Assembly (NCBI RefSeq): GCF_001194135.2
Contig: NC_068988.1
Location: 14,700,226 to 14,764,225 of the forward strand
Direction of reading: 5' to 3'
Source of the DNA: Octopus bimaculoides
Taxonomy: Eukaryota
Length of the DNA stretch: 64,000 nt
This document shows positions 52,788 through 53,308 of the stretch, piece after piece. Within the stretch, counting starts at the first letter, position 1. Each line of letters opens with the position of its first letter. The position numbers and the translations under genes are program-made. The notes under the pieces are model-generated. The model made no database searches. It saw only the letters and a program-made list of their open reading frames with translations, and had not been told where the DNA came from.

Positions 52788-53308
52788 TATTCATTTAAAA
52801 TATAGAGATGCCTATAATATGACATCTAACCCGCTAGAAAGAGCAGCAAAAATCTCTATACCGCAAAAATAGGGATAATTTCGAAAGAGAATGAAAAATA
52901 AAAACATTTTTACCAGTCTATACTCTCTACCATGGTTTCAAGCTATTTAGCAAGATAAAAGTATATCTAACTCGGGAGCTTTCGTCAGCAGAGTGCCGCA
53001 TTAGCGTGTGAACACGAGCCAAGGAGTTAGATATACTTTTATCTTGCTGAATAGCTTGAAACCTTGGTACAGAGTATAGACTGGTAAAAATGTTTTTATT
53101 TTTCATTCTCTTTCGAAATTATCCCTATTTTTGTGGTATAGAGTTTTTTGCTGCTCTTTCTAGCAGGTTAGATGTCCTATTATAGGCATCTCTATATTTT
53201 AAATGAATAATATATATGTAGTCTATTGACTAATTTTTTATTCTCGCTGGACCACTGGTGGTAAATTAAATTTCTAAAATTTCTTTTACTGCCCTATGTT
53301 TAATAATG
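52788..53308 (+). mobile_element. Non-autonomous Penelope-like/retrozyme-like insertion with 5' inversion and 16-bp TSD
   Basis: The direct repeat ATAGAATAAACAATAT lies at 52772-52787 and 53309-53324. Internal inverted arms of about 190 bp (52784-52973 and 53024-53213, 7 mismatches) flank a 50-bp spacer, and the element contains a hammerhead motif. Confidence 0.75.
52922..52994 (-). ncRNA. Type I hammerhead ribozyme motif with palindromic stem III
   Basis: Minus strand: ACTCTG-CTGACGA-AAGCT-(32 nt)-AGCTT-GAAA-CCATGG-TA^GAGAGT. The core, stem II and palindromic stem III are intact. Stem I has one G-G mismatch, and the duplicate arm has the pairing C at that position. Confidence 0.8.

What the first reader, a model, noticed from the sequence alone, without database searches (positions are those of the whole stretch)
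52922..52994. Near-canonical hammerhead ribozyme in the sense strand of FCHO intron 1
The minus strand reads ACUCUG-CUGACGA-AAGCU-loop-AGCUU-GAAA-CCAUGG-UA^GAGAGU, with all core nucleotides present. Stem III is a self-complementary palindrome (ACCAUGGU), the hallmark of the minimal hammerheads that act as dimers in Penelope-like elements and animal retrozymes (established knowledge). The one stem I defect (G at 1.1) is a C in the duplicated arm at 53070, so the ancestral motif paired perfectly. Because it lies on the FCHO pre-mRNA strand, it could cleave intron 1 (inference). Weak points are the A-U first pair of stem II and possible sequestration inside the large hairpin.
Basis: partly seen in the sequence, partly recalled or inferred. 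Interest (0 to 1): 0.85.

Follow-up and report, generated by a model that had tools for sequence, protein, structure and literature searches.

The report
Weak hammerhead motif in foldback retro-insert
The hammerhead-ribozyme motif is really there, in the sense strand of FCHO intron 1, but it scores below the family threshold, sits in one copy of a 521-bp inverted-repeat retro-insertion of the kind Penelope-like elements leave, and is most likely a crippled relic that does not cut the intron.

Summary
**Observation confirmed.** The minus strand 52994→52922 reads ACUCUG‑CUGACGA‑AAGCU‑(32 nt)‑AGCUU‑GAAA‑CCAUGG‑UA|GAGAGU. It lies in FCHO intron 1 (61012→45695), sense strand.

**"Near-canonical" is overstated.**
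- Rfam Hammerhead_1 aligns end to end at only 17.6 bits (gathering score 34). It appears only when 106 nt are searched.
- That score and my own descriptor both give about 0.007 chance hits per window.
- 10.1–11.1 is A–U rather than G–C, and 1.1/2.1 is G•G.
- A slipped stem I register is 7 kcal/mol better than the hammerhead fold.

**Context.** A perfect 16-bp target-site duplication brackets a 521-bp insert (52788–53308) in TA/CA microsatellite.
- The insert has two 190-nt inverted arms (96% complementary), a 50-nt unique centre and a one-sided 95-nt tail.
- This is the published Penelope-like-element (PLE) insertion architecture.
- The hammerhead is complete only in the longer, minus-strand copy. 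The other copy is truncated inside loop 2.

**Best reading (about 0.55).** A PLE- or retrozyme-derived type I hammerhead relic, inactive here. The foldback (−317 kcal/mol) outcompetes it by 63 kcal/mol, and there is no dimer partner.

**Main rival (about 0.38).** A chance motif in a foldback of other origin.

No second copy could be retrieved, so covariation is untested.

The parts
52772..52787 (.). Left copy of the 16-bp target-site duplication ATAGAATAAACAATAT
   Evidence: Exact 16-nt word at both insert borders. The longest shared word in 2000 shuffles was 14, typically 7.
52788..53308 (.). 521-bp insertion bounded by the duplication, lying in TA/CA microsatellite
   Evidence: No other copy in the window. 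The 4% divergence between the arms argues against an assembly palindrome artefact.
52788..53023 (-). Longer, minus-strand copy of the repeat unit (50-nt centre plus arm). It contains the whole hammerhead motif and reads toward its 3' end at 52788.
   Evidence: The assignment of the centre to this copy is inferred from the hammerhead being completed only in this orientation.
53024..53213 (+). Inverted, 5'-truncated copy (arm L). It carries only the 3' half of the motif (AGCTTGAAACCTTGGTACAGAGT at 53053-53075) and is truncated inside loop 2.
   Evidence: 190 nt, 96% complementary to 52784-52973; alignment with 7 substitutions.
53214..53308 (+). Unique 95-nt tail on one side only, between arm L and the right duplication copy
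   Evidence: One-sided tails are a PLE signature, though 30-40 bp in the literature (PMC8557442; PMC11167929).
53309..53324 (.). Right copy of the 16-bp target-site duplication
52922..52994 (-). Type I hammerhead-like motif. The predicted cleavage site lies between A17 (52928) and G1.1 (52927).
   Evidence: Descriptor hit. Rfam RF00163 aligns full length, 1-45/45, at 17.6 bits against a gathering score of 34.
52982..52988 (-). Core box CUGACGA (C3-A9), located in the unique 50-nt centre
52929..52939 (-). G12A13A14 plus helix III ACCAUGGU (2 bp plus the palindromic tetraloop CAUG as a monomer; 8-bp duplex as a dimer, -13.2 kcal/mol)
45695..61012 (-). FCHO intron 1, which hosts the insertion
   Evidence: Exon 1 MSIMTSFVDNFW|GTAAG; exon 2 acceptor at 45696-45695; tblastn and Pfam FCH.

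Best explanation
The motif is the hammerhead of a short retro-inserted repeat unit of the Penelope-like-element (PLE) or non-LTR-retrozyme kind, in a copy that is now crippled.

**Inferred insertion mechanism.**
- The PLE-type machinery cut both strands of a TA/CA-rich target with a 16-bp stagger.
- It primed reverse transcription of the 3' region of the element's RNA from both DNA ends.
- One cDNA started at an internal AUAU site and ran 236 nt, past the hammerhead. It gave the minus-strand copy 53023->52788.
- The other started 95 nt further 3' and stopped 190 nt into the shared region, inside loop 2. It gave arm L plus the tail.
- Joining the two left head-to-head inverted copies flanked by the duplication.

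**Likely role in the parent element.** A type I hammerhead with a 2-bp helix III and a palindromic tetraloop would process multimeric or pLTR-containing transcripts, probably as a dimer.

**State of this copy.**
- The FCHO pre-mRNA contains it, but it is almost certainly silent.
- G at 1.1 mispairs and favours a slipped stem I.
- The A-U pair sits at 10.1-11.1.
- No partner copy is present.
- The 190-bp foldback sequesters the 3' half of the motif.
- The practical product of the locus is a long intronic dsRNA hairpin.

**Shown:** sequence, architecture, duplication, energies, sub-threshold family score.
**Inferred:** PLE origin, ancestral activity, present inactivity.
For: **Motif**
- All core nucleotides and the type I topology are present.
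- Rfam Hammerhead_1 aligns over its whole length, including N7=C, GAAAC and the AAAUAG 3' end of loop 2.

**Architecture**
- 190-nt arms at 96% complementarity with a 50-nt centre.
- A 16-bp duplication beyond every one of 2000 shuffles.
- A one-sided tail and a microsatellite target.
- PLE protein cleaves and extends both DNA strands and initiates internally on the RNA (PMC11167929).
- Dual hammerheads 100-700 bp apart on opposite strands are reported (PMC4209133).

**Other support**
- Both arms read outward in the hammerhead's sense orientation.
- Given the real arms, a random 50-nt centre completes a hammerhead at only 1.3e-5 (strict) to 2e-4 (loose).
- The centre shares only the two stem strands with arm L, not their flanks. 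This fits RNA stems rather than a partial duplication.
- With the other arm's C at 1.1, the minimum-energy fold has stems I and II in the correct register.
- Helix III is of the type described for invertebrate hammerheads (PMC7229834).
Against: - The Rfam score is half the gathering score, and the hit is absent from searches of the window or of 801 nt.
- G10.1-C11.1, called highly conserved in canonical and PLE hammerheads, is A-U here. U11.1 is present in both arms.
- Helix II carries a 32-nt interior, unlike the 4-bp canonical or 7-8-bp PLE minimal forms, and there is no bulged nucleotide between 9 and 10.1.
- The tail is 95 nt, not 30-40.
- The window holds no PLE reading frame, no tandem repeat and no other copy.
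- No related sequence was found in any collection reachable here, so conservation and covariation are untested.
- Motifs of this quality arise by chance about once per 10 Mb, and another is present in this window.
- I recognised the architecture after the motif was known.
Confidence: 0.55

Rival explanations
1. The motif is a chance match. The foldback is an insertion of some other origin, for example a LINE-mobilised plus-strand RNA (52974->53308) whose cDNA snapped back on itself, or an atypical foldback element. The centre then happens to contain CUGACGA flanked by words complementary to the arm.
For: - Sub-threshold Rfam score.
- About 0.007 chance hits per window, so hundreds per gigabase genome.
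- A second sub-threshold hammerhead-like hit in the same window.
- Stem I is built from low-complexity CUCU/AGAGAG and slips.
- Non-consensus A10.1-U11.1.
- A snap-back model explains a tail on one side only, and the hammerhead would then be antisense to the element.
- A LINE-type RT fragment lies 1.3 kb away.
- No family copy was found.
Against: - A chance motif would also have to fall inside, and in the sense orientation of, a rare insertion whose architecture is the published PLE signature.
- Random centres complete the motif at 1e-5 to 2e-4.
- Twin priming by LINEs gives inverted but non-duplicated segments (established knowledge).
- A 50-nt loop is large for snap-back.
- No tRNA, 5S or 7SL-like head is found on the plus strand.
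- A 16-bp duplication plus an asymmetric tail does not fit a DNA-transposon MITE.
Confidence: 0.38
2. The motif is a currently active self-cleaving ribozyme that cuts FCHO intron 1 between 52928 and 52927, as a monomer or a trans dimer. It may be unmasked when the foldback is unwound or edited.
For: - Complete core in the sense strand of the pre-mRNA.
- Helix III of the invertebrate type, which is reported to be more stable than the amphibian one.
- Intronic hammerheads exist in mammals (HH9/HH10; cited in PMC6155905).
Against: - G•G at 1.1/2.1 and A-U at 10.1-11.1.
- The hammerhead-compatible fraction of the isolated 73-mer is 8e-6.
- +63 kcal/mol against the foldback, whose 5' arm is made first.
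- No cis partner.
- Even genuine PLE minimal hammerheads cleave poorly in vitro. [quoted passage not shown]
- No conservation evidence.
Confidence: 0.04
3. Whatever the origin of the motif, the relevant feature is the 190-bp near-perfect intronic RNA hairpin, which could be a substrate for dsRNA pathways (ADAR editing, Dicer/hpRNA-derived small RNAs).
For: - Minimum free energy -305 kcal/mol for 461 nt, z = -42.
- Weak miRNA-precursor-like Rfam hits (mir-122 at 31.6 bits, MIR4208) that only reflect the hairpin.
Against: - No expression or small-RNA data.
- All Rfam miRNA hits are far below their gathering scores.
- The element looks like a recent, single insertion rather than a conserved gene.
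Confidence: 0.1

Closest known systems
Canonical metazoan type I hammerheads of satellite DNA and non-LTR retrozymes (Schistosoma Sm-alpha, newt satellite 2, mussel, coral and axolotl retrozymes; Rfam RF00163)
   Same: - Type I topology, a 6-position helix I and CUGAcGA/GAAAC core spelling.
- Helix III of 2 bp capped by a palindromic tetraloop.
- AAAUAG at the 3' side of loop 2.
- AT-rich host repeat.
   Different: - 17.6 bits against a gathering score of 34.
- A-U instead of G-C at 10.1-11.1, and G•G at 1.1/2.1.
- A 32-nt interior in helix II, and no recognisable loop 1.
- Not in a head-to-tail tandem array, so no dimer partner and no circular-RNA unit.
Penelope-like element insertions and their pLTR hammerheads (PMC4209133, PMC8557442, PMC11167929)
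   Same: - A heavily 5'-truncated copy with an adjacent inverted 5'-truncated copy.
- A tail at one end only, and a microsatellite target.
- A hammerhead in the sense strand of the unit, with a small palindromic helix III.
- Dual motifs on opposite strands a few hundred bp apart.
   Different: - No RT/GIY-YIG frame and no demonstrated homology to any PLE.
- A tail of 95 rather than 30-40 bp.
- None of the PLE minimal-hammerhead traits: 7-8 bp helix II, a bulged base after A9, G10.1-C11.1.
- The inverted copy keeps only half a hammerhead.
Conserved intronic hammerheads of amniotes (HH9, HH10; Rfam RF02275, RF02277)
   Same: Sense-strand location in an intron of a protein-coding gene.
   Different: - Those are deeply conserved single-copy motifs with stable helices.
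- Here there is no Rfam match to HH9 or HH10 and no conservation evidence.
- The motif arrived with a recent repeat insertion.
Foldback elements, MITEs and hairpin-RNA loci
   Same: A 430-bp near-perfect hairpin of -305 kcal/mol.
   Different: - A 16-bp duplication rather than a short fixed one.
- An asymmetric 95-nt tail inside the duplication.
- A 50-nt unique centre.

Membership tests
Hammerhead ribozyme, type I (Rfam RF00163) | Conserved core: C3 U4 G5 A6 N7 G8 A9, G12 A13 A14, A15.1-U16.1, H17 | tested here: met
   CUGACGA, GAA, A...U and A17 are at the expected positions.
Hammerhead ribozyme, type I (Rfam RF00163) | Three helices around the core, with helix I open | tested here: met
   - Helix I: 5 bp plus G•G at 1.1/2.1.
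- Helix II: 5 bp, then an internal loop and a 9-bp imperfect extension.
- Helix III: 2 bp plus the CAUG loop.
- The pairs can be drawn, but they are not the minimum-energy fold.
Hammerhead ribozyme, type I (Rfam RF00163) | Covariance-model score at or above Rfam's gathering score (34 bits) | tested here: not met
   - 17.6 bits, seen only in a 106-nt search.
- No hit at gathering over the window.
- No hit at E<=10 over 801 nt.
Hammerhead ribozyme, type I (Rfam RF00163) | G10.1-C11.1 pair, highly conserved (PMC4209133) | tested here: not met
   A52981-U52940. U11.1 is present in both arms.
Hammerhead ribozyme, type I (Rfam RF00163) | Loop 1-loop 2 tertiary contacts | tested here: inconclusive
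   The 3' end of loop 2, AAAUAG, matches the consensus. It sits in an internal loop of a long helix II, and no loop 1 or bulge is evident in stem I.
Hammerhead ribozyme, type I (Rfam RF00163) | Conservation of the core and covariation of the stems among homologous copies | not testable with these tools
   - Only the two arms exist, and they overlap just the 3' half.
- No copy in the window.
- No copy in the metagenome, viral or prokaryote collections or in the protein indexes.
Hammerhead ribozyme, type I (Rfam RF00163) | Site-specific self-cleavage | not testable with these tools
   Needs in vitro transcription or RNA-end mapping. The thermodynamic proxies are unfavourable.
Penelope-like element / non-LTR retrozyme insertion | 5'-truncated copy with an adjacent inverted 5'-truncated copy | tested here: met
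   Arms 52784-52973 and 53024-53213, 96% complementary, with a 50-nt centre belonging to the longer copy.
Penelope-like element / non-LTR retrozyme insertion | Tail extension at one end only | tested here: inconclusive
   A one-sided extension is present at 53214-53308, but it is 95 nt against the 30-40 bp described.
Penelope-like element / non-LTR retrozyme insertion | Retro-insertion footprint (target-site duplication) and microsatellite target bias | tested here: met
   A 16-bp exact duplication within a (TA)n/(CA)n-rich flank.
Penelope-like element / non-LTR retrozyme insertion | Sequence homology of the unit to a PLE pLTR or 3' end, or a family RT plus GIY-YIG reading frame | not testable with these tools
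   - No eukaryotic genome or repeat library is available.
- Nothing similar in the window.
- The nearby RT fragment looks LINE-like from my own knowledge and has no Pfam hit.
Penelope-like element / non-LTR retrozyme insertion | Head-to-tail tandem repeats (pLTR or retrozyme arrays) | tested here: not met
   The two copies are only inverted. There is no direct repeat of the unit.
Conserved intronic hammerheads (HH9/HH10) | Match to RF02275 or RF02277, and cross-species conservation at an orthologous intron | tested here: not met
   No HH9 or HH10 match at this locus. Orthologous loci could not be retrieved.

The most novel reading that the evidence does not exclude
A complete type I hammerhead delivered into FCHO intron 1 by a PLE-type double-primed insertion is a conditional ribozyme. 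It is normally masked by a 190-bp dsRNA foldback, and it cleaves the pre-mRNA only when the hairpin is unwound or destabilised, for example by A-to-I editing. That would couple dsRNA metabolism to FCHO expression.
Probability: 0.03. Interest if true: 0.65.

Novelty: new member of a known kind. Interest (0 to 1): 0.25.

Why it matters
**If the best reading holds.**
- The locus is an ordinary relic of a known association: hammerheads carried by Penelope-like elements and retrozymes.
- Its modest value is as a clean genomic footprint of that insertion mode, in a very short copy. It shows a 16-bp duplication, two head-to-head 3'-end copies with different start and stop points, and a one-sided tail.
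- This agrees with the in vitro finding that PLE protein primes on both DNA strands and initiates internally on its RNA.
- It would also define a hammerhead variant with A10.1-U11.1 and a long helix II.

**For FCHO.** The likely consequence is only a long intronic dsRNA hairpin.

**If the motif is chance.** The case is a useful caution. Descriptor-level hammerhead matches occur about once per 10 Mb and need family evidence before any functional claim.

Tried and rejected
**Searches for comparators: all failed.**
- The 59-aa frame across the centre against the 5.8-billion protein index: no word hits.
- Exact-protein look-ups of the two 31-aa arm frames and a neighbouring 155-aa frame: not on record.
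- Two metagenome DNA scans and one viral scan with arm words: 0 hits.
- The prokaryote genome scan gave one 20-mer match in a Saccharibacteria MAG that does not extend, so it is chance.
- The spliced FCHO peptide found only relatives at 60% identity or less, the best being a weevil. The LINE RT fragment found only unnamed ENA contigs at 65% or less. The organism was therefore not identified and no orthologous intron was retrieved. My recollection that the abundant SINE here resembles octopus SINEs is unverified.
- No text supplements are held for the two key PLE papers.

**Rejected readings.**
- *miRNA precursor.* The mir-122 and MIR4208 hits are far below their gathering scores and reflect only the hairpin.
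- *tRNA-derived SINE head in the centre.* No ARAGORN or Rfam support.
- *Assembly palindrome artefact.* The arms differ at 7 sites.
- *The centre as a degenerate duplicate of arm L.* Only the two stem words are shared, not their flanks.
- *A hammerhead on the plus strand.* There is no CUGANGA.
- *A bulged base after A9, as in PLE minimal hammerheads.* Only 2 bp would then form.

**Not evaluated.** The dimeric fold could not be evaluated with nested-structure software. Only the 8-bp helix III duplex was scored.

Full report
**1. Observation**

Read on the minus strand, 52994→52922 is ACUCUG CUGACGA AAGCU (32 nt) AGCUU GAAA CCAUGG U A GAGAGU.

I wrote a descriptor for this layout:
- helix I, at least 5 of 6 pairs
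- CUGANGA
- helix II, 4-5 bp, with a loop of up to 40 nt
- GAAA
- a helix III bounded by A and U, with at least 3 nested pairs
- H17

It finds exactly this site in the window and nothing else. All invariant hammerhead positions are present. Helix I has five pairs plus a G•G at 1.1/2.1. Helix II is A‑U, A‑U, G‑C, C‑G, U‑A. Helix III is the palindrome ACCAUGGU, which as a monomer gives 2 bp plus the tetraloop CAUG.

Exon 1 of an FCHO-type gene (ATG 61048, …NFW ending at 61013, then GTAAG) and exon 2 (from 45694, after an AG) lie on the minus strand. The spliced peptide matches Pfam FCH at 1.5e‑16. The motif is therefore in the sense strand of intron 1 (61012→45695).

**2. Is it more than chance?**

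- Rfam finds nothing at gathering thresholds over the window.
- It finds no hammerhead at E≤10 over 801 nt with lax filters.
- Only when the search is narrowed to 106 nt does Hammerhead_1 (RF00163) align. It aligns end to end (model 1-45/45) at 17.6 bits against a gathering score of 34, with E = 0.049 for that tiny search.
- Rescaled to one family and the whole window, that is about 0.007.
- Dinucleotide shuffles of the window give the same figure for my descriptor: 0.005-0.0075 hits per window, or 0.08 when loosened.

So the motif is unusual for one window, but it is expected about once per 8-12 Mb, which means hundreds of times in a large animal genome. As an internal control, a second unrelated site at 44591-44631 (−) reaches 15.6 bits against Hammerhead_HH9.

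**3. What surrounds it**

The motif sits inside a foldback. The arms 52784-52973 and 53024-53213 are 190 nt long and 96% complementary, with 50 nt between them. The transcript of this region folds at −305 kcal/mol, z = −42.

The catalytic box, the 5' strand of helix I and the 5' strand of helix II lie in the unique 50-nt centre. GAAA, helix III, A17 and the 3' strands lie in the arm.

Reading the plus strand shows more:
- The exact 16-mer ATAGAATAAACAATAT occurs at 52772-52787 and at 53309-53324. It brackets a 521-bp insert inside TA/CA microsatellite.
- In 2000 shuffles of the flanks, the longest shared word was 14 and typically 7.
- Inside the duplication, the layout is arm, centre, arm, then a unique 95-nt tail on one side only.
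- The arms differ at seven substitutions, so this is not an assembly palindrome.
- No other copy of the unit is in the window.

**4. Comparison with the literature**

Published accounts of PLE insertions and of animal hammerheads give these traits:

| Trait | Source |
|---|---|
| Heavy 5' truncation | PMC8557442, |
| Often an inverted 5'-truncated copy immediately adjacent, forming inverted repeats | same |
| Insertion bias for (TA)n/(CA)n | same |
| Hammerheads in the pLTR | same |
| Purified PLE protein cleaves and extends both DNA strands and starts reverse transcription at internal RNA sites, which explains the tail | PMC11167929, |
| Metazoan type I hammerheads have a 1-2 bp helix III capped by a 2-4 nt palindromic loop and act as dimers | PMC4209133, |
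| Dual PLE hammerheads occur 100-700 bp apart on opposite strands | PMC4209133, |
| Invertebrate hammerheads typically have 2 bp plus a tetraloop | PMC7229834, |

The insert here fits this picture. Two outward-reading copies of one 3' region meet head to head. The longer copy (53023→52788, minus strand) extends past the hammerhead. The shorter one is truncated inside loop 2 and keeps only AGCUUGAAACCUUGGUACAGAGU (53053-53075).

Junction microhomology (…AATAAT/ATAT…) is visible at the arm R border.

**5. Weighing chance against relic**

For a relic:
- Given the real arms, a random 50-nt centre completes a hammerhead at only 1.3e‑5 (strict) to 2e‑4 (loose).
- The centre shares with arm L only the two stem words, not their flanks.
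- The hammerhead points in the sense direction of the copy.
- With the other arm's C at 1.1, the minimum-energy fold has helices I and II in the right register.

Against:
- The score is half the Rfam threshold.
- G10.1‑C11.1, described as highly conserved, is A‑U. U11.1 is in both arms, so this would be a family trait rather than decay.
- Helix II has a 32-nt interior.
- The tail is 95 nt, not 30-40 bp.
- There is no PLE reading frame or tandem copy in the window.
- I recognised the architecture only after the motif was known.
- No second full copy could be obtained, so the decisive test, conservation and covariation, was not possible.

With two copies, polarity is unknown at both sites.

I put about 0.55 on a genuine PLE- or retrozyme-type hammerhead relic, and about 0.38 on a chance motif in a foldback of other origin (for example snap-back cDNA of a plus-strand RNA).

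**6. Does it work now?**

Almost certainly not.
- Alone, the 73-mer prefers a slipped helix I (−19.3 kcal/mol) that pairs C3, U4 and the cleavage-site A17. This is possible because helix I is CUCU/AGAGAG. Structures containing all hammerhead pairs make up 8e‑6 of the ensemble.
- In the insert transcript, enforcing the hammerhead costs +63 kcal/mol relative to the foldback (−317 kcal/mol). The competing 5' arm is transcribed first.
- The palindromic helix III could form an 8-bp intermolecular duplex (−13.2 kcal/mol), but there is no second copy in cis.
- Even bona fide PLE minimal hammerheads cleave weakly in vitro. [quoted passage not shown]

The tangible product in the FCHO pre-mRNA is a 190-bp dsRNA hairpin.

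**7. Verdict**

The locus is best filed as a probable, sub-threshold and inactive member of a known kind: a type I hammerhead carried by a Penelope-like or retrozyme-type retro-insertion. Membership is unproven because the Rfam threshold and the G10.1‑C11.1 criterion are not met and covariation is untestable here.

Novelty is low. The main points of interest are the clean insertion footprint and the variant helix II. Searching the source genome with the 335-nt unit would settle the question quickly.

Noticed in passing
window 44591-44631 (-): A second sub-threshold hammerhead-like motif (UAG CUGAAGA UGUG-CAAUGA-CACA GAAA UGCAUAUGU C CUA). Rfam Hammerhead_HH9 gives 15.6 bits against a gathering score of 52, over a partial model. 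It lies in FCHO intron 2, between inverted SINE-head fragments 44396-44457 and 44852-44913. I used it as a background control.
   Followed up: partly
window 5764-5874 / 6205-6315: A 111-nt inverted repeat (92% complementary) encloses about 330 nt that include a tRNA-like SINE head (about 5945-6015). It lies next to the FCHO exon at 5412-5317.
   Followed up: no
window 51225-51530 (+): A reverse-transcriptase C-terminal fragment of LINE appearance runs into an N gap (about 51533-52130), 1.3 kb from the insert. The best database relatives are unnamed ENA contigs at 65% identity or less, and there is no Pfam hit.
   Followed up: partly
window, many sites (e.g. 13721-14083, 28005-28568, 44852-44913, 56467-56784): A very abundant SINE-like repeat recurs on both strands, with translations such as LTSAFHAGMGW and DALPNxNHSExVVGAF. 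Together with the dense CA/TA/CT microsatellites, 33% GC and about 4 kb of N gaps, it reminded me of cephalopod genomes. This is unverified, and the organism was not identified.
   Followed up: no
window 53324-53394 (-) and 52708-52777 (-): The mir-297 and mir-466-like Rfam hits (up to 43 bits against a gathering score of 90) are produced by CA/TA microsatellite hairpins flanking the insert, not by miRNA genes.
   Followed up: no
L001 688-707 (Saccharibacteria MAG JAQGHA010000009.1): An exact 20-mer match to the arm word AGTATAGACTGGTAAAAATG, with no extension of similarity. It is a chance match, as expected for a 20-mer in 596 Gb.
   Followed up: yes
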